Notes under the pieces: generated by a model
Database searches by the model: none
Told to the model about the DNA's origin: nothing
What the model saw: only the letters and a program-made list of their open reading frames with translations
From: Octopus sinensis
Lineage: Eukaryota
Assembly (NCBI RefSeq): GCF_006345805.1
Contig: NC_043025.1
Location: 11,718,001-11,782,000, forward strand
Direction: 5' to 3'
Length of the DNA stretch: 64,000 nucleotides
In this document: piece after piece, positions 5,481 through 14,619 of the stretch
How the letters are laid out: each line of letters opens with the position of its first letter
How positions within the stretch are numbered: position 1 is the stretch's first letter
Program-made: the position numbers and the translations under genes

Positions 5481-6194
5481 GCGATCACTATCATTAACTA
5501 CGCTTATCCACCGCCACCGCCGCCGCTGCCTCCACACTCAGTCATAGAACAAAAAACTATATATATATATAAGCCTTGCTATCATCGCCACCGCCGCTTC
5601 CATCTCTTTCATTACCATCATTTACAAAAAAAAAATCAGTCATTTCCACCGCCGCCACCACCACAACCATCACCATCACCATCATCATTATTATCATCGC
5701 TATAAAGAAAAAACATAGCAGCGAAATTTTTTTTTTTTTAGATATGCTACTTGAAACAAACAATTTCTGTGGAAAAAAAAAAAAAAATGCAACTAAATAC
5801 ATATATATATAAAATCACAAAAAAAATCATCGTCGATTATCGGACACACGAACACAAGCATGAAGACCAGACGACACAAGCTATGGCGGCCGACCTTCCT
5901 CTCTCTCTTACGTTCTCAATAAAACATACATTTTGTTGTTTGTTTTCATTTTGAACAATTTGTTTGTTATTTTTTTAGCGAGGAGGGGGAAATAAAATAC
6001 ATTATTATTATTATTATTACTAATGTTTTTTTTATAGTATGTGAACGTATGCGCGTGCGTATCTATTTGTGTGTGTGTGCCTGTATATGTCTATGTAAGT
6101 GTGTGTCTGTGTGTGTGTATATATATGTGTGTGCGTATGTATGTGTGTGTGTGTATACCTTTAAACTGCTATTCCTTGTTCGGCTTTTCTTCTT

Positions 6195-6285
6195 CAATTC
6201 CAATAACGAGAATGATCGATTGGCTGTTCGCCTGGCCGACTGCAAGATTTCAACCAATGAGAATCGTGCCGGAAGTGCTCCTCTC
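6195..6285. promoter_or_regulatory. Candidate housekeeping (possibly bidirectional) promoter with CCAAT boxes and an ETS/GABP site
   Basis: CCAAT at 6200 and 6254, ATTGG at 6219, CCGGAAGTG at 6269-6277, all in unique sequence upstream of the SMIM4 unit. Confidence 0.45.
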
Positions 6286-6539
6286 CATCTCATTTTCTCT
6301 TTCTTTCTTTCTTTCTTTTTTTTTTACACCGCCGCCTCCACCTTCAACTTCACCCTCGCCATCGCCGCCACCACCAGCATCATCATCATCATCACTATCA
6401 ACACCACCACCATCATTACCATCACAATTACCTATTTTTTTACTACCCACAAGGGGCCAAACACAGAGGGGACAATCAAGGACAGACAAAGGGACTAAGT
6501 CGATTACATCGACCCCAGTGCATAACTGGTACTTAGGGA

Positions 6540-7560
6540 TTTTGCTTTTCCCCTCTCTTACCTCTCTTCCCCTTCCTCCTATAGCTGAATATTCCTCTCT
6601 CTCTCTCTCCGTCTTTCCCTCTCTTTCTTTAGTTTGCTTTTCCCTTCTCTTACACTCTTCCTCTTCCTCCTATAGCTGAAACTTCCTCTCTCTCTCTCTC
6701 TCTCTCCATCTTTCCCTCTCTTTCTTCAGTTTGCTTTTCCCCTCTCTTACCTCTTCCCCTTCCTCCTATAGCTGAAACTTCCTCTCTGTTTCTTCAGTTT
6801 GCTTTTCCCCTATCTTACACTCTTCCTCTCCCTCCTATAGCTGAATATTCCTCTCTCTCTCTCTCCGTCTTTTCCTCTCTTTCTTCAGTTTGCTTTTTTC
6901 CCTCTTTTACACTCTTCCTCTTCCTCCTATAGCTGAAACTCCCTCTCTGTCTATCTCTATCTCAGTCTTTCCCTCTCTTTCTTCAGTTTGCTTTTCCCAT
7001 CTCTTACCCTCTTTCTCTTCCTCCTATAGCTGGAACTCCCTCTCTTTCTATCTCTATCTCAGTTTTTTTTCCTCTCTTTCTTCAGTTTGCTTTTCTCCTC
7101 TCTTACACTCTTCCCCTTCCTCCTATAGCTGAAACTTCCTCTCTCTCTATCTCTCTCTCCGTCTTTCCCTCTCTTTCTTCAGTTTGCTTTTCCCCTCTCT
7201 TACACTCTTCCACTCTCCTTCCTATAGCTGAAACTTCCTCTCTCTCTATCTCTCTCTCCGTCTTTCCCTCTCTTTCTTCAGTTTGCTTTTCCCCTCTCTT
7301 ACACTCTTCCACCTCTCCTTCCTATAGCTGAAACTTCCTCTCTCTCTATCTCTCTCTCCGTCTTTCCCTCTCTTTCTTCAGTTTGTTTTTCCCCTATCTT
7401 AACTCTTCCCCTTCCTCCTATAGCTGAAACTTCCTCTCTCTCTATCTCTCTCTCCGTCTTTCCCTCTCTTTCTTCAGTTTGCTTTTCCCCTCTCTTACAC
7501 CCTCTTCCCCTTCCTCCAACAGCTGAAACATCCCCCCTCTCTCTCATTCATATACTTTCC
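6540..7560. repeat. Polypyrimidine minisatellite, ~95 bp x ~11
   Basis: Recurring anchor ctatagctgaaacttcc...cagtttgcttttccc every ~70-100 bp. Confidence 0.9.
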
Positions 7561-7681
7561 CCTCTATATCTCCCGTACATTCTTTACTACCCTCTCTTTC
7601 CTCTCTCCTCCGCCTACACCTTCTCTCTTCCTCCCATCACTAGAGAAGTCCCACCGTCCGTCGCTCCGCGTTTTCTCCCAG

Positions 7682-7727
7682 GTCATGTCTTCTCTCTTCT
7701 CTCCGCTGATCATCGCCAGTTTCAAAG
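7682..7727 (+). other. Candidate 5' UTR exon of the SMIM4-BRAWNIN transcript
   Basis: Bounded by ttttctcccag| and AAG|gttagt in a CpG-richer, non-repeat island. The SMIM4 ATG lies 1 nt after an acceptor, so an upstream exon is needed. Confidence 0.4.
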
Positions 7728-7824
7728 GTTAGTCACAGGTCATCATCAAATCTAATTAACACCACGTGCGAATCCTCTGTAATTAATTAAATTAGTACTT
7801 TATTTCCCTTTTCGCCAGTCTCAA

Positions 7825-8030
7825 GGGCGGTACTACTCGAGAACAGCGGTCCCGGTGCGCGCACTCGCGTACTCGTGCGTCCGCGCTAGCTAGTCGTGAC
7901 TAGTCGATCCATACTTTGTGTTTTTGTGTTATGTACTTTATTTTGTGTTTTATTTACGTTGTAGGATCGACTAGTCACGACTAGCTAGCACGAGTGCGCG
8001 CACCGGGACCACTGTTTTCAAGTAGTACCC
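7825..8030. mobile_element. Palindromic MITE-like element, copy 1
   Basis: Long inverted arms (ggtactact...ggtcccggtgcgcgc...ctagtcgtgactagtcgatcc versus its reverse complement) around an AT-rich core. Second copy at 30921-31155. Confidence 0.85.
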
Positions 8031-8054
8031 TGAAGGTCAACCTCAATAGGGTGG

Positions 8055-8720
8055 TACAGGTGTTATTAAGCGGCACAACGTGGTCATCCGACTTGCTAGA
8101 AATAGCAGCCAGGTCACCCTCAGATCACTCCCTACTATCTTATAGAAAACACGCATTTGATTATATATTTCTGGGCCCCTATTTCCGGACACACTGTGTC
8201 TGAAAATAAGGATCGGTTTTGCTGGTCAGCTAGATCAGGTGTGGCCCAGGGCTAAATAATCAGATGTGCTTTACAGGTGTTATTAAGCGGGACAACATGG
8301 TCGTTCGACTTGCTAGAAATAGCAGCCAGGTCACCCTCAAATCACTCCCTACTATCTTATAGAAAACACGCATTTGATGATATATTCCTGGGCCCCTATT
8401 TCCGGACATACTGTGTCTGAAAATATAGATCGGTTTTGCTGGTCAGCTAGATCAGGTGTGGCCCAGGGCTAAATAATCAGATGAGCTTTACAGGTGTTAT
8501 TAAGCGGGACAACATGGTCGTTCGACTTGCTAGAAATAGCAGCCAGGTCACCCACAGATCACACCCTACTATCTTATAGGAAACACTCATTTGATGATAT
8601 ATACCTGGGCCCCTATTTCTGGATATACTGTGTCTGAAAATACAGAACGGTTTGCTGGTCAAGCTGAAAGATCTTTGATCACTGGTCAGCTAGATCAGGA
8701 GTGGCCCAGGTGTGAATAAT
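8055..8720. repeat. ~216-bp tandem repeat x3 containing the dispersed gacttgctagaaatagcagcca motif
   Basis: caggtgttattaagcgg recurs at ~8058, ~8275 and ~8491. Confidence 0.88.
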
Positions 8721-8867: not shown

Positions 8868-9250
8868 TACTCTTTTACTTGTTTCAGTCATTTGACTGCG
8901 GCCATGCTGGAGCACCGCCTTTTTTTAAATCGAGCAACTCGACCCCGGGACTTGTTCTTTGTAAGCCCTGTACTTATTCTATCGGCGACGTAAACACACC
9001 AGCATCGGTTGTCAAGCAATGCTAGGGGGACAAACACAGACACACAAACATACACGCATACACACATGTATATATGTACATATATACGACGTGCTTCTTT
9101 CAGTTTCCGTCTACCAAATCCACACACAAGGCTTTGGTCGACCTGAGGCTATAGTAGAAGACACTTGCCCAAGGTGCCACGCAGTGGGACTGAACCCGGA
9201 ACCATGTGGTTGGTAAGCAAGATATTTACCACACAGCCACTCCTGCGCCT
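8868..9250 (-). mobile_element. SINE family B, near full length (tRNA-like head, core, microsatellite, tail)
   Basis: The minus strand begins aggagtggctgtgtggtaa...ttccgggttcagtcccactgcgtggcaccttgggcaagtgtcttc, with pol III A/B-box-like motifs. Confidence 0.88.
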
Positions 9251-9256
9251 ATTAAG

Positions 9257-9598
9257 TACCTATTTCTTTACTACCCACAAGGGGCTAAACACAGAGGGGA
9301 CAAACAAGTACAGACAAACGGATTTAGTCGATTATATCGACCCCAGTGCGTAACTGGTACTTAATTTATCGATTCCGAAAGGATGAAAGGCAAAGTCGAC
9401 CTCGGCAGAATTTGAACTCAGAACGTAAAAACAGACGAAATACCTATTTCTTTACTACCCACAAGGGGCTAAACACAGAGGGGACAAACAAGGACAGACA
9501 AAGGGATTAAGTCGATTATATCGACCCCAGTGCGACCCCTTATTTAATCGACCCCAAAAGGATGAAAGGCAAAGTCGACCTCGGTGGAATTTCGACTT
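9257..9598 (-). repeat. SINE family A tandem (2 units)
   Basis: Same unit as 431-2863. Confidence 0.88.
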
Positions 9599-9689
9599 TG
9601 CCTTTCATCCTTTCGGATGAACAAGTCCGGATCGATTTGGTAACGAAAGGGTTAACTGACCCTCTTTTTCATTTTTTGCTTCTTTCAGA

Positions 9690-9843
9690 ATGTTCCGGCG
9701 CAGTGAAATCTTGAAACGCATCGTAAGGGCCTGGCCTGGGAAGAAAACTTTCGGACTGTACAGATTTATGCCAATTTTCTTTGTCCTTGGAGCTGCTCTA
9801 GAATTTTCCATGATCAACTGGCACGTTGGAGAGGTGAACTTCT
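9690..9843 (+). CDS. SMIM4: SMIM4/UQCC5 (sloth1-like) complex III assembly microprotein, coding exon 1
   Basis: Pyrimidine tract and tttcag|a precede the ATG at 9690. Encodes MFRRSEILKRIVRAWPGKKTFGLYRFMPIFFVLGAALEFSMINWHVGEVNF, matching the recalled SMIM4 signature (PGKxxFGxYRFxPxFFVLGxxxExxMI...VG...FY). Phase-1 donor T|gtaagt at 9844. Confidence 0.93.
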
Positions 9844-10167
9844 GTAAGTGTTGCTTATATACAGTAATTCCTCGATTATTGGGGGTCTTACGTTCCAAAT
9901 ATCCCACGATCAGTGAAAATCAAAGAAGTAGGAACAGTACTGGACTCTTTTACTTGTTTCAGTCATTTGACTGTGGCTTTGCTGGAGCACCGCCTTTAGT
10001 CGAGCAAATCGACCCCAGGACTTATTCTTTGTAAGCCTAGTACTTATTCTGTTGGTCTCTTTTGCCGAACTGCTAAGTGATGGGGGCGTAAACGCACCAA
10101 CATCGGTTGTCAAGCGATGTTGTGGGGCACAAACACAGACACACAAACTTACATGCAAACATACATA

Positions 10168-10562
10168 TCTTTATATATAAAAGTGAAGTTGTGTGTCTGT
10201 CTCCTACGATTTAGATTCCTAACTACTCCCACATTTTGCGGTGCAGTTTAACCAAAACCAGGTATCTTATAGTCGTGATTCATATCGAGCCCTTCGTGGT
10301 ATTAGCGCGCGTCTACGATGAGTCTACAATTTTAAAAAAAATTCAACATCATTTTTTTCCATTTTAATGCATTTTTTCGCTATTATATAAGGGAAGTAAC
10401 TCTCTAAAAATGTCTACGATGAGTCAACGATTTAAAAAAAAATTTACCATCTTTTTTTTCCATTTTTAATGCATTTTTTTGCTAATTTTTGGCTATAACT
10501 CTAAAAATGCTTATATAGTTATTTCCCTTACAAACCCGAGCAACGCCGGGCGATACTGCTAG
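10168..10562 (+). mobile_element. Non-autonomous Helitron-like element in the SMIM4 intron
   Basis: A|TC at the 5' end, CTAG|T at the 3' end, and a subterminal hairpin cccgagcaacgccggg. Related 3' ends occur at ~17205, ~17452 and ~23922. Confidence 0.75.
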
Positions 10563-10589
10563 TATATATATATATATATGTATGTGTGC

Positions 10590-10870
10590 ATGCTGTTCAA
10601 AAATGTATATATATGTGTGTGTGTATGTGACCGCGTGTGTAACGTTGGTGATTTTTTTCCCCTCTGTCTTCCCTTCTCTGGATCTTTCCTTCTCCTTGTT
10701 TCCGACGAAGAGCTCCACTCGAAACGTTAAACCCTCCTCCTTTCCTGAGCGTCCAATAATACTATATTCCTTCCATGTCCTCGCATTGTTGTGTTTTTTG
10801 TGCTTTCTTGTTTGGATTAACTATATATACATATATATATATATATACATACATATATATATATATATAT

Positions 10871-10924
<54 letters not shown>

Positions 10925-11165
10925 GTATATTTATATATATATATATATATTCAAAATGTGACCGCGTGTGTAGCATTGGTGATATTTTTTCCTCTGTCTT
11001 CCTTCTCTGGATCTTTCCTTCTCCTATGTTTCCGACGAAGAGCTCCGCTTGAAACGTTAAACCCTCCTTCTTTCCTTCTTTCCTGAGCGTCCAATAATAC
11101 TATATTTGTTCCACGTCCTCGCGTTGTCGTGTGTTTTTTGTGCTTTCTTGTTTGGATTAACTATA
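10590..11165 (+). mobile_element. Two tandem copies of a Penelope-like pseudo-LTR repeat, each with a minimal hammerhead-like motif
   Basis: Direct repeats of ~240 bp separated by (TA)n, each containing gtttccgacgaagagctcc(a/g)ct(c/t)gaaacgttaaac. Further copies at ~26060-26280 and ~32275-32480. Confidence 0.65.
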
Positions 11166-11216
11166 TATATATAAATATATTTTTTTTCTATATTTTCACC
11201 TGTTTCTCAATTGCAG

Positions 11217-11281
11217 ACAGAGTGTACAAAAGAAGACAAATTTCTGAAAAGGTACAACAACTGGCATACGAAGAGACCTGA
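11217..11281 (+). CDS. SMIM4: SMIM4/UQCC5 coding exon 2 (YRVYKRRQISEKVQQLAYEET*)
   Basis: Acceptor ttgcag|AC completes T|AC = Tyr, in phase with exon 1. Gives the FYxVYxR+ motif and TGA at 11279-11281. Total 219 nt = 72 aa plus stop. Confidence 0.9.
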
Positions 11282-11409
11282 TCTACATCCTCACCTGACT
11301 GAATATATAATCGCACACACACATTTATATATCTATATACATCAACACCATATACACACCATACGTATACTTATATACTTACACCATCTGGATATTGAAT
11401 AGAGGAACT

Positions 11410-11517
11410 ATGCCAGCTGGTGTGTCTTGGTTTTCCTACCTGAAGCATGCCACCGTTGCAATGCTCTTCATGATGGCAGGTGCACAAACTGTTCACCTGG
11501 TTTACCGACCTTTAGAT
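11410..11517 (+). CDS. UQCC6: BRAWNIN/C12orf73/UQCC6 (sloth2-like) microprotein, coding exon 1
   Basis: ATG in gaactATG context (A at -3). Encodes MPAGVSWFSYLKHATVAMLFMMAGAQTVHLVYRPLD, matching the recalled family signature MPAGVxWxxYLK...xMxAGxQxVHxxYxP. Phase-0 donor GAT|gtgagt at 11518. Below the ORF-track length cutoff. Confidence 0.92.
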
Positions 11518-11654
11518 GTGAGTATGGAGATGCTTCTTGGTCCTTATGCTTTACTTTAGGGTTTGTTCAGGGTGCATAAATGCTGGTCCTTATACCTTTG
11601 CCATTGACTTAATCCGCTTCCCCCAAATTCAGGGCCTTGTATTTCCAGTAGAAA

Positions 11655-12235
11655 GGATTAGTGTCGGGCGAAATGCCGAGGGGTATTTCGTCTGCTGTTA
11701 CGTTCTGGGTTCAAATTCCGCTGAGGTCGACTTTGCCTTTCATCCTTTCGGGGTCGATAAATTAAGTACCAGTTACGCACTGGAGTCGATATAATCGACT
11801 TAATCCGTTTGTTTGTCCTTGTTTGTCCTCTCTGTGTTTGGCCCCTTGTGGGTAGTAAAGAAATAGGTATTTCGTCTGCCGTTAGGTTCTGAGTTCAAAT
11901 TCCGCCGAGGTCGACTTTGCCTTTCATCTTTTCGGGGTCGATAAATTAAGTACCAGTTACGTACTGGGGTCGATATAATCGACTTAATCCCTTTGTCTGT
12001 CCTTGTTTGTCCCTTCTGTGTTTAGCCCCTTGTGGGTAGTAAAGAAATAGGTATTTTGTCTGCTGCTACGTTCTGAGTTCAATTTCCACCGAGGTTGACT
12101 TTGCCTTTCATCCTTTCGGGGTTGATAAATTAAGTACCAGTTACGCACTGGGGTCGATATAATCGACTTAATCCGTTTGTCTGTCCTTGTTTGTTCCCTC
12201 TGTGTTTAGCCCCTTGTGGGTAGTAAAGAAATAAT
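11655..12235 (+). repeat. SINE family A, head plus 3 tandem units, in the BRAWNIN intron
   Basis: Head ...gggcgaaatgccgagggtatttcgtc followed by three repeats of the ~185-bp body. Confidence 0.88.
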
Positions 12236-12614
12236 TAAGTATTAAGGCAGCGAGCTGGAAATATGCTGTGCATGAGAAGACCTGGCAGGACAAGTGAGTC
12301 CATAACCCCTGGACTTTGCCAGGGATGTGGCCAGCCCACTTATGCGTACCTTTCCTTCTTTGGACACTAAACTCTGCTTGCGAAGACCTGTTGAGGCAAG
12401 TGAAATCGAACCACATCCGACGACTGGCACTCATGCCAACCTCCCTTCATTGGACACTAAACTCTGCTTGCAAAGACCTGTTGGGGCAAGTGAAATCGAA
12501 ATCGAAATTGAACCAAATCCTATGACTTTTATCCTTCCGGGGTCAATGAATTAAGTACCAGTTGCGTACTATCATTGTTCCCACTCACCGAAATCTCAGA
12601 CCTTGTGCCTTTAG

Positions 12615-12965
12615 TAGAAAAGATTGTGGCTGTTGCCAGCCTTGCCTGGCCCCCGTGCCGGTGGCACGTAAAAAGCACCATCCAATCGTGGCTGTTGCCA
12701 GCCTCACACGGCCTCCGTGCTGGTGGCACGTAAAAAGCACCATCCGATCGTGGCCATTGCCAGCTTCACCTGGCCCCCGTGCCAGTGGCACGTAAAAAGC
12801 ACCCACTACACTCATGGAGTGGTTCGCGTTAGGAAGGGCATCCAGCCGTAGAAACATTGCCTGATCAGACTGGGTCTGGTGCAGCCTTCTGGCTTCCCAG
12901 ACCCCAGTTGAAATGTCCAACCCATGCTAGCATGGAAAGCGGACACTAAATGATGATGATGATGA
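12615..12965 (+). mobile_element. SINE family C with an RTE-like (GAT)n tail and internal ~50-bp repeats
   Basis: gtggcacgtaaaaagcacc repeats, then ...ccaacccatgctagcatggaaagcggac...gatgatgat. Confidence 0.85.
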
Positions 12966-12990
12966 TTATTACTATTATTATTATTATTAT

Positions 12991-13175
12991 TCAGTAGTTT
13001 TATTTTTATAGCGTGCTTTCACTTCACTACCGAGCGCAGCTCTGTGTGCCTTGGGTATGTGCTGTGGTTTGCTGTGATGCTCTGATGGTTATTGTATGGA
13101 AAGTGTTCTGCGTAGGATGTGTGCAGTGCCCAGTAGTGCAATTTTCTGTATGTTATATGTGTTTGTAAGTCCTGG

Positions 13176-13178
<3 letters not shown>
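12991..13178 (-). mobile_element. 5'-truncated R4/Dong-like non-LTR retrotransposon 3' end
   Basis: The minus strand encodes ...NIQKIALLGTAHILRRTLSIQ*, a C-terminus typical of restriction-like-endonuclease LINEs. It is followed by a 3' UTR with AATAAA and a (TAA)n tail, and has TAA repeats on both sides. Confidence 0.7.
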
Positions 13179-13226
<48 letters not shown>

Positions 13227-13307
13227 TATTATTATCATTATTATTATTATTATCATTATTATCAATATTATTATCATTATTATTATCATTATTATCATTA
13301 CTATTAC

Positions 13308-13349
<42 letters not shown>

Positions 13350-13363
13350 CATTATTATTATTA

Positions 13364-13403
<40 letters not shown>

Positions 13404-13582
13404 ATTATTATTATTATTATTATTATTATTATCATTATTATTATTATTTTTATTATTATTATTATCATTATTATTATTTTTATTATTATTATTATCATTA
13501 TTATTATTATTATTATTATCATTATTATTATTATCATTATTATCAATATTATTATCATTATTATTATCATTATTATCATTAC

Positions 13583-13627
<45 letters not shown>

Positions 13628-13725
13628 CATTATTATTATTTTTATTATTATTATTATCATTATTATTATTATTATTATTATCATTATATTATTATCATTA
13701 TTATCATTATTATTACTATTGTTAT
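13179..13725. repeat. (ATT)n/(ATC) microsatellite, ~550 bp
   Basis: Directly visible. Ends ~50 nt before the BRAWNIN exon 2 acceptor. Confidence 0.97.
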
Positions 13726-13773
13726 TGATAGTTTCCGTTTAATTTTTTTTAAAAACTTTTTTTTGTTTTTCAG

Positions 13774-13836
13774 GACTTAGAGGACTTAGTGAAAGCAGAA
13801 AAAGAAAAGTTACAGCTTAAACAGCCTAGCAGCAGT

Positions 13837-13867
<31 letters not shown>

Positions 13868-13914
13868 CCAGCGACAGTCCTACCGTGACAGATTCACAAG
13901 GGCCTCCCTCATAA
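13774..13914 (+). CDS. UQCC6: BRAWNIN/UQCC6 coding exon 2 (DLEDLVKAEKEKLQLKQPSSSNNINNNNNNNTSDSPTVTDSQGPPS*)
   Basis: Strong acceptor tttttgtttttcag|GAC, phase 0, open to TAA at 13912-13914. The join reads YRPLD-DLEDLV, similar to the recalled insect sloth2 YKPLEDL. Total 82 aa. Confidence 0.82.
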
Positions 13915-14619
13915 TCTCTGTATTTTAGTGTTCCCGTATGCAAGTGCAAAGGGGTTACATTGGAAAGGCACACTACTGCTGAACAAACCAAAGAAATAAC
14001 CTGTATGTGGTTGCATGCCCTAGAAATAGCAGCCACGTCCCTCCTTCTCAAACTACACCTTCCTGTCTTGAACAAAAAAAATTTTTTTAATTAAAAGAAA
14101 AGAAAAAAAATAGAATCAGATTTGAGATTGAAGTAGATTTTTTTAATCTGATTTCTAATTTTGTCAAGAATTTTGCTAAAATAGGGAATTTAAATTGAAA
14201 TTATTTTTATTGTGGTTTTATGCGGCCCCCATGTGGTTTTGCGTCTCTCCAACATTGACCACTTCACTGAAAGTTTAACACAGCTGAAATAAATAAATTC
14301 GAGTTATCTGTGTGTATGTGATAATGGCCCCAGATTATCTATGGTTGAGCTGACCTTTTGAGATTAACCAATACATGCTTTGCGAATAGCAGTAATTCTT
14401 GAGACCTGTCATAACACCAATGGTGTTTCCGAGGCAAACTGTTTTATTAACTTCAAAAAAATGAAGTGAATAACAACCAGTGTGTGTATTTGTATTGGCA
14501 GAATGACCGATCCTCTTAAGCCTTCAGCATTCATGTTATTCTATCAAATGTAATGTTTATTTATTCACATTTTGTAAAATTAATGATATACATTAAATTG
14601 TAGCTTCAAGATTTTGAAG

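What the first reader, a model, noticed from the sequence alone, without database searches (positions are those of the whole stretch)
9690..13914. Hidden bicistronic microprotein operon: SMIM4/UQCC5 and BRAWNIN/UQCC6 share one exon
Seen in sequence: the SMIM4 stop (11281) and the BRAWNIN ATG (11410) are 128 nt apart. The spacer has no ATG, no AATAAA and no strong acceptor, and one exon (11217-11517) appears to carry the end of ORF1 and the start of ORF2. Established: both proteins act in early cytochrome b / complex III assembly. They are separate genes in human, but Drosophila encodes them on one transcript as sloth1/sloth2 (Bosch et al., eLife 2022). Inference: a cephalopod keeps this eukaryotic polycistron in an intron-containing form, which implies deep conservation of coupled expression. 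The ORF track shows neither protein correctly, and annotation pipelines would probably miss ORF2 or call it UTR.
Basis: partly seen in the sequence, partly recalled or inferred. Interest (0 to 1): 0.88.

Follow-up and report, generated by a model that had tools for sequence, protein, structure and literature searches.

The report
Octopus SMIM4–BRAWNIN two-protein gene
Two tiny mitochondrial complex III assembly proteins (SMIM4/UQCC5 and BRAWNIN/UQCC6) lie head to tail in one octopus gene and share its middle exon, which is a real but expected new example of the sloth1–sloth2 arrangement already described from choanoflagellates to lamprey.

Summary
ORF1 (9690-9843 + 11217-11281, 72 aa) matches Pfam UPF0640/SMIM4 at E 8e-33. 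ORF2 (11410-11517 + 13774-13914, 82 aa) matches DUF4516/BRAWNIN at E 1e-15. The ORF1 stop and the ORF2 ATG are 128 nt apart inside one exon bounded by good splice sites.

The spacer has no ATG, no AATAAA or ATTAAA, no plausible acceptor and no stable fold. The first canonical poly(A) hexamer after the SMIM4 stop lies 176 nt beyond the BRAWNIN stop.

RNA-seq contigs from the cuttlefish Sepia esculenta carry both ORFs, spliced, 52 nt apart, on one RNA. This shows a dicistronic transcript in a cephalopod. No octopus RNA could be examined.

It is not new in kind. Bosch et al. 2022 reported the linked architecture in choanoflagellate, sea squirt, lamprey and fly. Their lamprey sequence has the same two intron positions and the same shared exon.

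The annotation prediction is reversed for octopus. RefSeq annotates ORF2 (O. sinensis LOC115226124, O. bimaculoides LOC106876313) and lacks SMIM4. The O. vulgaris annotation calls two adjacent genes.

How ORF2 is translated (leaky scanning, reinitiation or a second isoform) is unresolved. Verdict: a new member of a known kind, of modest interest.

The parts
7644..7727 (+). Predicted upstream, probably non-coding exon ('exon 0'). It is joined to exon 1 in the O. vulgaris gene model. It contains an out-of-frame upstream ATG at 7686.
   Evidence: The 30-aa N-terminal extension of O. vulgaris P0001 maps here (tblastn 7642-7728). The acceptor is cactAG|A after 90% pyrimidine and the donor is AAAG|gttagt. 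The last 48 nt are 100% identical in O. bimaculoides, while the first half diverges with amino-acid changes. The annotated start codon sits in a 5-nt ATGAG mini-exon inside a GA-rich repeat, so the extension is probably UTR. No SMIM4 homologue seen carries an extension like it. Transcription of this exon in octopus was not tested.
9689..9843 (+). Exon 1. ATG1 is at 9690. It encodes SMIM4/UQCC5 residues 1-51 plus the first base of codon 52.
   Evidence: Strong acceptor at 9687-9688. Donor TCT|GTAAGT. The intron position (after ..NF, phase 1) is the same as in fly, lamprey and the bivalve Sinanodonta.
9844..11216 (+). Intron 1 (1373 nt). It holds a tandemly duplicated unit of about 330 nt and TA microsatellites.
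11217..11517 (+). Shared exon 2: the end of ORF1, the spacer and the start of ORF2.
   Evidence: Both junctions are used by the annotated octopus proteins. The Sepia cDNA is colinear across both junctions.
11217..11281 (+). ORF1 C-terminal coding part (YRVYKRRQISEKVQQLAYEET). Stop TGA at 11279-11281.
   Evidence: 100% identical in O. vulgaris. The end of the ORF (QQLSYEET, stop TAA) is also visible in O. bimaculoides next to an assembly gap.
11282..11409 (+). Inter-ORF spacer, 128 nt, 8% G. It has no AUG, no poly(A) hexamer and no stable structure.
   Evidence: MFE -11 kcal/mol, z -0.83. No Rfam match. Length varies between species through TA/CA repeats: 132 nt in O. vulgaris and longer in O. 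bimaculoides (about 173 nt by my count from the printed sequence). It has no ATG in any of the three species (by inspection).
11410..11517 (+). ORF2 (BRAWNIN/UQCC6) first coding part, residues 1-36: MPAGVSWFSYLKHATVAMLFMMAGAQTVHLVYRPLD.
   Evidence: This is the only DUF4516 match in the 2.72-Gb genome. The donor position after YRPL(D) is the same as in lamprey and Sinanodonta.
11518..13773 (+). Intron 2 (2256 nt). It holds SINE-like repeats and an (ATT)n microsatellite of about 550 nt. It has no AATAAA or ATTAAA on the + strand.
13774..13914 (+). Exon 3, coding part: ORF2 residues 37-82, including an Asn-rich tail from an (AAC)n repeat. Stop TAA at 13912-13914.
   Evidence: The tail length differs in O. 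bimaculoides.
13915..14310 (+). Probable 3' UTR with the first canonical poly(A) signals: ATTAAA at 14090, AATAAA at 14288 and 14292.
   Evidence: 99% identical to O. vulgaris. The poly(A) site was not determined.

Best explanation
This is the octopus orthologue of the dicistronic sloth1–sloth2 gene (the assembly is probably Octopus sinensis). One pre-mRNA is spliced so that its middle coding exon carries three things: the last 21 codons and stop of SMIM4/UQCC5, a 128-nt unstructured AUG-free spacer, and the first 36 codons of BRAWNIN/UQCC6. The mature mRNA therefore carries two complete small ORFs in different frames, of 72 and 82 codons.

Each ORF encodes a single-pass membrane microprotein of the family that assembles mitochondrial complex III. 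Co-transcription would keep their levels coupled.

The downstream ORF is most likely reached by scanning ribosomes. Some 40S subunits pass AUG1 (AAAGAAUGU) and the two weak-context in-frame Met codons (M27, M41), then start at AUG2 (GGAACUAUGC). This is the leaky-scanning mechanism shown for Drosophila. Some reinitiation after ORF1 across the 128-nt spacer is also possible.

Shown here: the identity of the ORFs, the gene structure, the lack of termination signals between the ORFs, and a dicistronic spliced RNA in a cuttlefish. Inferred: the single transcript in octopus itself, the translation mechanism and the function.
For: - Pfam matches: PF15114 at E 8.2e-33 and PF14990 at E 1.2e-15.
- Each product has one hydrophobic segment: ORF1 residues 26-42, ORF2 residues 15-31.
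- Splice sites and frames.
- Annotated octopus proteins use the same junctions.
- BRAWNIN is single-copy in the genome, and the window holds the only full-scoring SMIM4 match.
- There is no canonical poly(A) hexamer between the SMIM4 stop and 176 nt past the BRAWNIN stop.
- There is no ATG in the 193 nt of exon 2 before ATG2 (P about 0.001). The only ATGs between ATG1 and ATG2 in the spliced RNA are two in-frame Met codons.
- The spacer is unstructured and matches no Rfam family.
- Sepia esculenta RNA-seq contigs from several runs carry SMIM4 (73 aa), a 52-nt spacer, BRAWNIN (65 aa), then AATAAA about 60 nt after the ORF2 stop, with both intron positions spliced out. The BRAWNIN sequence P0094 lies on 21 contigs, and both ORFs were confirmed on the five of those examined, L004-L008. 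Two of the runs were traced to published S. esculenta transcriptome studies.
- Lamprey and fly share the intron positions, and lamprey shares the middle exon.
- Leaky scanning was shown with reporters for fly sloth1-sloth2.
Against: - No octopus RNA data were available, so a TSS inside intron 1 or the spacer cannot be excluded. The spacer is full of TATA-like TA repeats.
- The O. vulgaris annotation lists two separate genes.
- AUG1 has a purine at -3, so leakiness is not obviously high. Two further in-frame AUGs must also be bypassed.
- Cross-species depletion of out-of-frame AUGs between the two starts is clear against shuffles (11 observed against 24.9 expected). It is not significant against ORF2 as an internal control (P 0.16). 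Sepia has two out-of-frame AUGs in that interval.
- In the bivalve Sinanodonta the BRAWNIN exon lies 3.2 kb downstream and has its own acceptor. The shared exon is therefore not universal in molluscs.
Confidence: 0.82

Rival explanations
1. These are two adjacent but independent genes. BRAWNIN is transcribed from its own promoter in intron 1 or the spacer. SMIM4 RNAs that run into the BRAWNIN exon are not used to make BRAWNIN.
For: The O. vulgaris annotation calls two genes. The spacer and the end of intron 1 are rich in TATA-like TA repeats. [quoted passage not shown] In Sinanodonta the two coding regions are 3.2 kb apart, with poly(A) hexamers between them.
Against: SMIM4 has no canonical poly(A) signal before the end of BRAWNIN. 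Exon 2 begins at a good acceptor, not at an obvious start site. Cuttlefish RNA-seq contigs span both ORFs in every contig examined. There is no ATG in the 193 nt upstream of ATG2, which includes part of ORF1. TA repeats are ubiquitous in this genome, so TATA-like motifs carry no weight.
Confidence: 0.08
2. It is a dicistronic mRNA, but ORF2 is translated mainly by termination-reinitiation after ORF1 rather than by leaky scanning. An upstream ORF in the leader may promote this.
For: The 128-nt unstructured spacer is a suitable length for regaining initiator tRNA, unlike the 5-nt fly spacer. AUG1 has A at -3. A predicted uORF starts at 7686 and, after splicing, would end at 9711-9713, overlapping AUG1 (read by me from the sequences). 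Its first 43 nt are invariant between O. sinensis and O. bimaculoides. Spacers of 44-240 nt occur in the other non-fly lineages.
Against: Reinitiation after an ORF of 72 codons is usually inefficient in animals (general knowledge). Whether exon 0 is transcribed in octopus is untested. The spacer sequence and length are poorly conserved even among octopuses. The only experimental data, from fly, favour leaky scanning.
Confidence: 0.25
3. Alternative splicing supplies a monocistronic BRAWNIN mRNA. The 5' exon(s) splice directly to exon 2 and skip exon 1, so that AUG2 is the first AUG of exon 2.
For: Exon 1 is a 155-nt cassette flanked by good sites. Exon 2 has no ATG before AUG2 in any frame (P about 0.001). 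In Sinanodonta the BRAWNIN exon has its own acceptor 22 nt before its ATG, which fits splicing from an upstream exon.
Against: No exon-1-skipped contig was seen among the Sepia contigs examined; all carry SMIM4. Exon 0 carries an ATG of its own at 7686. There are no octopus RNA data.
Confidence: 0.12

Closest known systems
Drosophila sloth1–sloth2 (CG32736/CG42308) dicistronic gene (Bosch et al., eLife 2022, PMC9681215)
   Same: Same two protein families in the same order on one strand, with the ORFs in different frames. The intron in the SMIM4 ORF is at the same place (after ..NF, phase 1). Between the two start codons the only internal ATGs are in-frame Met codons.
   Different: The fly spacer is 5 nt and the octopus spacer is 128 nt. 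Fly sloth2 has no intron, whereas octopus BRAWNIN is split after YRPLD. The fly transcript, leaky scanning and complex III function are shown experimentally. None of these is shown for octopus.
Lamprey (Petromyzon marinus) sloth1–sloth2 locus, Supplementary file 1 of Bosch et al. 2022
   Same: Identical exon logic. Exon A ends ..ETF|. The middle exon carries the end of ORF1, a spacer and the start of ORF2 up to YRPDL|. A third exon finishes ORF2. There are no out-of-frame ATGs between the two starts.
   Different: The spacer is 201 nt and GC-rich in lamprey, and 128 nt and AT-rich in octopus. Lamprey is a vertebrate. The authors offered it as a candidate dicistronic gene without transcript proof.
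Sepia esculenta SMIM4–BRAWNIN transcript (Logan RNA-seq contigs L004-L008)
   Same: Cephalopod orthologues: 71% identity for SMIM4, and 65% over the first 52 residues of BRAWNIN. Same ORF order. The same TDG-like UDG gene lies upstream in divergent orientation.
   Different: The spacer is 52 nt and contains no TA repeats. Two out-of-frame ATGs lie between the starts. The genomic exon structure is unknown.
Human SMIM4 (UQCC5, chr 3) and C12orf73/BRAWNIN (UQCC6, chr 12)
   Same: Same Pfam families, and each protein has a single predicted transmembrane segment. Reported as complex III assembly factors (citing Zhang 2020, Dennerlein 2021, Liang 2022).
   Different: They are unlinked monocistronic genes in jawed vertebrates.
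Sinanodonta woodiana (bivalve) SMIM4 / BRAWNIN locus (L017)
   Same: Same strand, same order and the same intron positions in both ORFs.
   Different: The BRAWNIN first coding exon is a separate exon 3.2 kb downstream of the SMIM4 stop, with its own acceptor. Between them lie 80 ATGs and several poly(A) hexamers. Only SMIM4 is annotated.

Membership tests
SMIM4 / UQCC5 / Sloth1 (Pfam PF15114, UPF0640) | Significant match to the family HMM over most of its length | tested here: met
   112.6 bits, E 8.2e-33, against a cut-off of 27 bits. Profile positions 2-64 of 67 are covered. The top database hits are named SMIM4, UQCC5 or sloth 1.
SMIM4 / UQCC5 / Sloth1 (Pfam PF15114, UPF0640) | Microprotein of about 70-80 aa with one central transmembrane segment | tested here: met
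   72 aa. The most hydrophobic 17-residue stretch is 26-42, FMPIFFVLGAALEFSMI, with Kyte-Doolittle 1.95. This is hydropathy only, not a dedicated TM predictor.
SMIM4 / UQCC5 / Sloth1 (Pfam PF15114, UPF0640) | Mitochondrial localisation and a role in cytochrome b / complex III assembly | not testable with these tools
   Known for the human and fly proteins only.
BRAWNIN / UQCC6 / Sloth2 (Pfam PF14990, DUF4516) | Significant match to the family HMM | tested here: met
   57.3 bits, E 1.2e-15, against a cut-off of 27 bits. Profile positions 1-45 of 46 are covered. It is the only such match in the genome.
BRAWNIN / UQCC6 / Sloth2 (Pfam PF14990, DUF4516) | N-terminal MPxGV motif, one transmembrane segment and a YRP/YKP motif | tested here: met
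   MPAGVSW...MMAGAQTVHLVYRPLD aligns with the fly, lamprey, Ciona, Sepia and lobster-like sequences. The hydrophobic stretch is 15-31.
BRAWNIN / UQCC6 / Sloth2 (Pfam PF14990, DUF4516) | Complex III assembly function | not testable with these tools
   Literature on human, zebrafish and fly only.
Dicistronic sloth1–sloth2-type gene | SMIM4 ORF directly upstream of the BRAWNIN ORF on the same strand, with no other gene between | tested here: met
   128-nt spacer within one exon.
Dicistronic sloth1–sloth2-type gene | Both ORFs present on one mature transcript | tested here: inconclusive
   Met in the cuttlefish Sepia esculenta (RNA-seq contigs). For octopus there is only indirect support: the splice sites, no poly(A) hexamer before the end of ORF2, and no acceptor in the spacer. 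No octopus RNA was available.
Dicistronic sloth1–sloth2-type gene | Both ORFs translated from that transcript, with the downstream ORF dependent on bypass of the upstream one | not testable with these tools
   Only sequence hints are available: the AUG-free exon 2 leader, the unstructured spacer, and weak contexts at the internal Met codons.
IRES-driven dicistronic mRNA | A structured or recognisable internal ribosome entry element in the spacer | tested here: not met
   MFE -11 kcal/mol for 128 nt, z -0.83. No Rfam hit in the spacer at E <= 0.1. The spacer sequence and length are not conserved among octopuses.

The most novel reading that the evidence does not exclude
In octopus the SMIM4:BRAWNIN ratio is set by something other than simple leaky scanning. 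One possibility is a conserved upstream ORF that starts at 7686, overlaps AUG1 after splicing, and feeds reinitiation at AUG2 across an AUG-free leader kept free of ATGs by selection. Another is regulated skipping of exon 1. Either would make the locus a tunable two-output gene whose mechanism differs from the fly paradigm.
Probability: 0.15. Interest if true: 0.5.

Novelty: new member of a known kind. Interest (0 to 1): 0.3.

Why it matters
- It adds cephalopods (and, in a looser form, a bivalve) to the lineages that keep SMIM4 and BRAWNIN linked. It also shows that the two intron positions and the shared middle exon are the same in octopus and lamprey. The intron-containing dicistronic layout is therefore probably ancestral to bilaterians. 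The fly's 5-nt spacer and the unlinked genes of jawed vertebrates would then be derived states.
- It has a practical annotation consequence. RefSeq octopus models hold one CDS for this locus, so SMIM4/UQCC5 is missing from the O. sinensis and O. bimaculoides protein sets, and BRAWNIN is labelled 'uncharacterized'.
- It does not open a new question. The phenomenon and its rationale (stoichiometric co-expression of two interacting complex III assembly factors) are already published.

Tried and rejected
1. **Processed retrocopies as fossil cDNA.** The extra UPF0640 matches in the genome (L011, L012, L013) are divergent exon-1-like fragments in a duplicated segment. They have no exon 2, spacer or BRAWNIN attached, so they say nothing about the transcript.
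2. **Octopus transcript contigs.** The exact 72-aa ORF1 is not in the protein collection. ORF2 occurs on only two contigs, of which the one shown is the O. vulgaris genome. No octopus RNA evidence could be obtained.
3. **O. bimaculoides as a third species for exon 1 and the exon 2 acceptor.** Both fall in runs of N (5488-8702 and 9607-9808 of L016).
4. **Cross-species AUG depletion as a test of leaky scanning.** It is strong against shuffles but not significant against ORF2 as an internal control. I treat it as suggestive only.
5. **Homology between octopus exon 0 and the Sepia 5' UTR.** The local alignment is no better than shuffles (P 0.09).
6. **The O. vulgaris 30-aa N-terminal extension as real coding sequence.** Rejected as probable UTR. 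Its ATG lies in a 5-nt mini-exon in a GA-rich repeat. The window differs from it by an amino-acid change. O. bimaculoides shows 7 of 29 replacements. No homologue seen carries an extension like it.
7. **Solved structures.** No significant match for either protein.
8. **IRES or other known RNA in the spacer.** None found.

Full report
**What is in the sequence**

The window is G000:C29:11,718,001-11,782,000 of a 2.72-Gb, 13,516-contig assembly. The ORF2 product is identical to RefSeq XP_029652970.1 of Octopus sinensis and to CAI9744248.1 of O. vulgaris. The window is 90-100% identical to the O. vulgaris locus, feature by feature. I take it to be O. sinensis; that is an inference.

Reading searches gives the following structure.
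- ATG1 is at 9690.
- Exon 1 ends at 9843 (TCT|GTAAGT, phase 1).
- Exon 2 starts at 11217 (ttctcaattgcAG|A).
- ORF1 stops at 11279-11281.
- ATG2 is at 11410.
- Exon 2 ends at 11517 (GAT|GTGAGT).
- Exon 3 starts at 13774 (ttttgtttttcAG|G).
- ORF2 stops at 13912-13914.

ORF1 is 72 aa and ORF2 is 82 aa. ORF2 is in the +2 frame relative to ORF1 in the spliced RNA.

**Identity of the two products**

ORF1 matches Pfam PF15114 (UPF0640, the SMIM4 family) at 112.6 bits, E 8e-33. ORF2 matches PF14990 (DUF4516, the BRAWNIN family) at 57.3 bits, E 1e-15. The curated cut-off for both is 27 bits.

Database neighbours of ORF1 are named SMIM4, UQCC5 or 'sloth 1' across arthropods and a bivalve. Each product has one hydrophobic stretch of transmembrane length. 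BRAWNIN is single-copy in the genome. The window holds the only full-scoring SMIM4 copy. No solved structure exists for either protein.

**Is the shared exon real?**

- The acceptors at 9687/8, 11215/6 and 13772/3 follow 75-90% pyrimidine. The only AGs in the spacer (11401, 11403) follow 45-50%.
- The annotated octopus proteins use exactly these junctions. O. vulgaris P0001 contains the 72 aa at 100% identity, and P0091 is the 82 aa at 100% identity.
- There is no AATAAA or ATTAAA on the + strand from the SMIM4 stop to 14090, which is 176 nt after the BRAWNIN stop (P about 0.07 by shuffles). An SMIM4 transcript therefore has no canonical place to end before it has run through BRAWNIN.
- The spacer has no ATG (P about 0.025). 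The whole 193 nt of exon 2 upstream of ATG2 has none either (P about 0.001).
- In the spliced RNA the only ATGs between ATG1 and ATG2 are the in-frame codons for M27 and M41, both with U at -3.
- The spacer is 8% G, folds no better than shuffles (z -0.83) and matches no Rfam family.
- Its length varies among octopuses through TA/CA repeats: 128 nt here, 132 nt in O. vulgaris, and longer in O. bimaculoides (about 173 nt by my count). It has no ATG in any of the three.

**Transcript evidence from a cephalopod**

A look-up of BRAWNIN homologue P0094 returned contigs from many sequencing runs; the sequence lies on 21 contigs. In the contigs examined, a 73-aa SMIM4 ORF is followed 52 nt later by the 65-aa BRAWNIN ORF. 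Neither intron is present, and an AATAAA lies about 60 nt after the ORF2 stop.

Two of the runs are listed in the data statements of transcriptome papers on the cuttlefish Sepia esculenta: SRR19578111 in PMC10141105 and SRR25097169 in PMC10571815.

The same contigs run into a divergently oriented 412-aa UDG-family gene with an uninterrupted ORF. I call it TDG-like from its size and Pfam family; that label was not tested further. In octopus the first coding exon of that gene covers only residues 9-51, so the contigs are spliced RNA and not genomic DNA.

This is direct evidence that a cephalopod makes a mature RNA carrying both ORFs. I could obtain no octopus RNA, so for octopus the single transcript remains an inference.

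**What was already known**

Bosch et al. [quoted passage not shown]

Their Supplementary file 1 gives the lamprey genomic sequence.
- Exon A ends ...GAGACCTTCT|GT, the same phase-1 position after ETF/VNF as in octopus.
- The next exon carries the end of sloth1, a 201-nt spacer and the start of sloth2 up to YRPDL|GT.
- A third exon completes sloth2 (spliced by me).

This is the octopus architecture exactly. The fly gene has the same sloth1 intron.

The 'intron-containing form' and the 'deep conservation' are therefore published facts for other lineages. The octopus is a new, unsurprising member. I found no paper on the cephalopod locus.

**Annotation**

In octopus the reverse holds.
- ORF2 is in RefSeq as 'uncharacterized protein' LOC115226124 (O. 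sinensis) and LOC106876313 (O. bimaculoides).
- No SMIM4 protein from those two species is in the 15-billion-sequence collection.
- In O. bimaculoides, exon 1 and the exon 2 acceptor lie in assembly gaps.
- The O. vulgaris annotation has both proteins, as two adjacent genes. It gives SMIM4 a 30-aa N-terminal extension that starts at a 5-nt ATGAG mini-exon in a GA-rich repeat. I regard the extension as a prediction artefact over a real or predicted 5' UTR exon.
- In the bivalve Sinanodonta only SMIM4 is annotated.

**Extent of the gene**

ATG1 lies 1 nt after a strong acceptor, so the gene begins upstream of the reported interval. The O. vulgaris model places an exon at 7644-7727 in window coordinates. 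Its 3' 48 nt are invariant between O. sinensis and O. bimaculoides, while its 5' half diverges.

In Sepia the SMIM4 ATG is only 250 nt from the ATG of the TDG-like gene in RNA space. In octopus that gene's first exon is about 7.5 kb before the window start, and O. vulgaris has the same synteny. The true first exon may therefore lie outside the window at a bidirectional promoter. This was not resolved.

**Mechanism**

I commit to a single transcription unit whose mature mRNA carries both ORFs (confidence about 0.8), with ORF2 reached by scanning ribosomes.

Leaky scanning is the best-supported route, because it is the only one with experimental backing (fly reporters). It also fits the octopus leader, where no out-of-frame AUG lies between the starts and the two internal AUGs have weak contexts.

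Reinitiation is a serious alternative in octopus. The spacer is 128 nt and unstructured, and AUG1 has A at -3. I rate it at about 0.25.

A pooled test for AUG depletion in nine sequences gave mixed results. It found 11 observed against 24.9 expected under synonymous-codon and spacer shuffles. Against ORF2 as an internal control it gave only 0.0032 against 0.0057 per nt (P 0.16). Sepia has two out-of-frame AUGs in the interval. I count this as suggestive at most.

An independent BRAWNIN promoter as the sole source of BRAWNIN (about 0.08) and an exon-1-skipped isoform (about 0.12) cannot be excluded without octopus RNA data.

**Variation within molluscs**

In Sinanodonta woodiana the two coding regions are on the same strand, in the same order, with the same intron positions. 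However, the BRAWNIN first coding exon has its own acceptor 22 nt before its ATG and lies 3.2 kb past the SMIM4 stop. Between them are 80 ATGs and several poly(A) hexamers. Translation of BRAWNIN from an unspliced dicistronic spacer is implausible there. Splicing or separate transcription must be involved.

Two further contigs show compact intronless SMIM4-BRAWNIN pairs. One (L018) comes from a source whose SMIM4 clusters with the lobster Panulirus protein and has a 137-nt spacer. The other (L019) is an unidentified genomic contig with a 79-nt spacer.

**Verdict**

The locus is a new member of a known kind, not a new kind. Interest is modest. Its value lies in fixing octopus annotation and in the point that the octopus and lamprey exon structures are identical.

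Noticed in passing
window 7686-7727 spliced to 9689-9713: An out-of-frame upstream ATG in predicted exon 0 would open a 22-codon uORF after splicing (MSSLFSPLIIASFKECSGAVKS). It overlaps the SMIM4 start codon and ends 21 nt after it. From this ATG to the donor the sequence is 100% identical in O. bimaculoides, while the upstream half of the exon diverges. The pyrimidine run just after it (CTTCTCTCTTCTCTCC) also resembles a 5'TOP/TCT initiator. The TSS could therefore lie here instead, which would leave the ATG out of the mRNA.
   Followed up: partly
L011 (G000:C8460:601478-601615) and L012 (G000:C7756:165953-166087); weaker L013: Divergent UPF0640/SMIM4-like exon-1-type ORFs (47-48 bits, above the Pfam cut-off). 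One carries an in-frame TAG. They lie in a duplicated segment about 130 nt downstream of the end of another ORF. No SMIM4 exon 2 or BRAWNIN follows. They are probably pseudogenised or captured fragments and are not retrocopies of the dicistronic mRNA.
   Followed up: partly
about 7.5 kb before the window start (window -7482..-7619, in L015), minus strand; L014 1-385; Sepia contigs L004-L008: A UDG-family gene (TDG-like by size and Pfam family) lies head to head with the SMIM4-BRAWNIN gene in O. sinensis, O. vulgaris and Sepia. In Sepia RNA-seq the two are merged into one contig with only 250 nt between their start codons. This suggests a shared bidirectional promoter with overlapping 5' ends. 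In octopus the coding starts are about 17 kb apart.
   Followed up: partly
window 13837-13868: An (AAC)n microsatellite inside the BRAWNIN coding exon gives an Asn-rich C-terminal tail (NNINNNNNNN). The tail differs in length and composition in O. bimaculoides (SSSSSN-NNNNNSNS). The C-terminus is therefore evolving by repeat slippage.
   Followed up: no
window 13178-13720: An (ATT)n/(ATC) microsatellite of about 550 nt fills the 3' part of intron 2 (GC 5%). The O. vulgaris intron is about 590 nt shorter, mostly here.
   Followed up: no
window 10560-10840 and 10891-11180: A tandem duplication of a unit of about 300 nt in intron 1, separated and flanked by TA microsatellites.
   Followed up: no
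window 11665-12233 and 9250-9620: Three head-to-tail copies of a SINE-like element of about 184 nt in intron 2. Related copies lie in inverted orientation just upstream of exon 1. There they form a hairpin that gives sub-threshold miRNA-family hits at 9546-9623.
   Followed up: no
window 7790-8030: A MITE-like element with long terminal inverted repeats lies directly downstream of exon 0. It gives a sub-threshold Rfam hit to MIR841 (47.6 bits against a gathering score of 200). It is followed by three tandem copies of about 217 nt at 8055-8665.
   Followed up: no
L016 9996-10001 (O. bimaculoides): In O. bimaculoides a G-to-A difference creates an AATAAA hexamer 6 nt before the BRAWNIN ATG (TTGAATAAAGGAACTATG). 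Octopus sinensis and O. vulgaris have AATAGA at the same place. It is probably a chance hexamer, but it could in principle terminate SMIM4 transcripts in that species.
   Followed up: no
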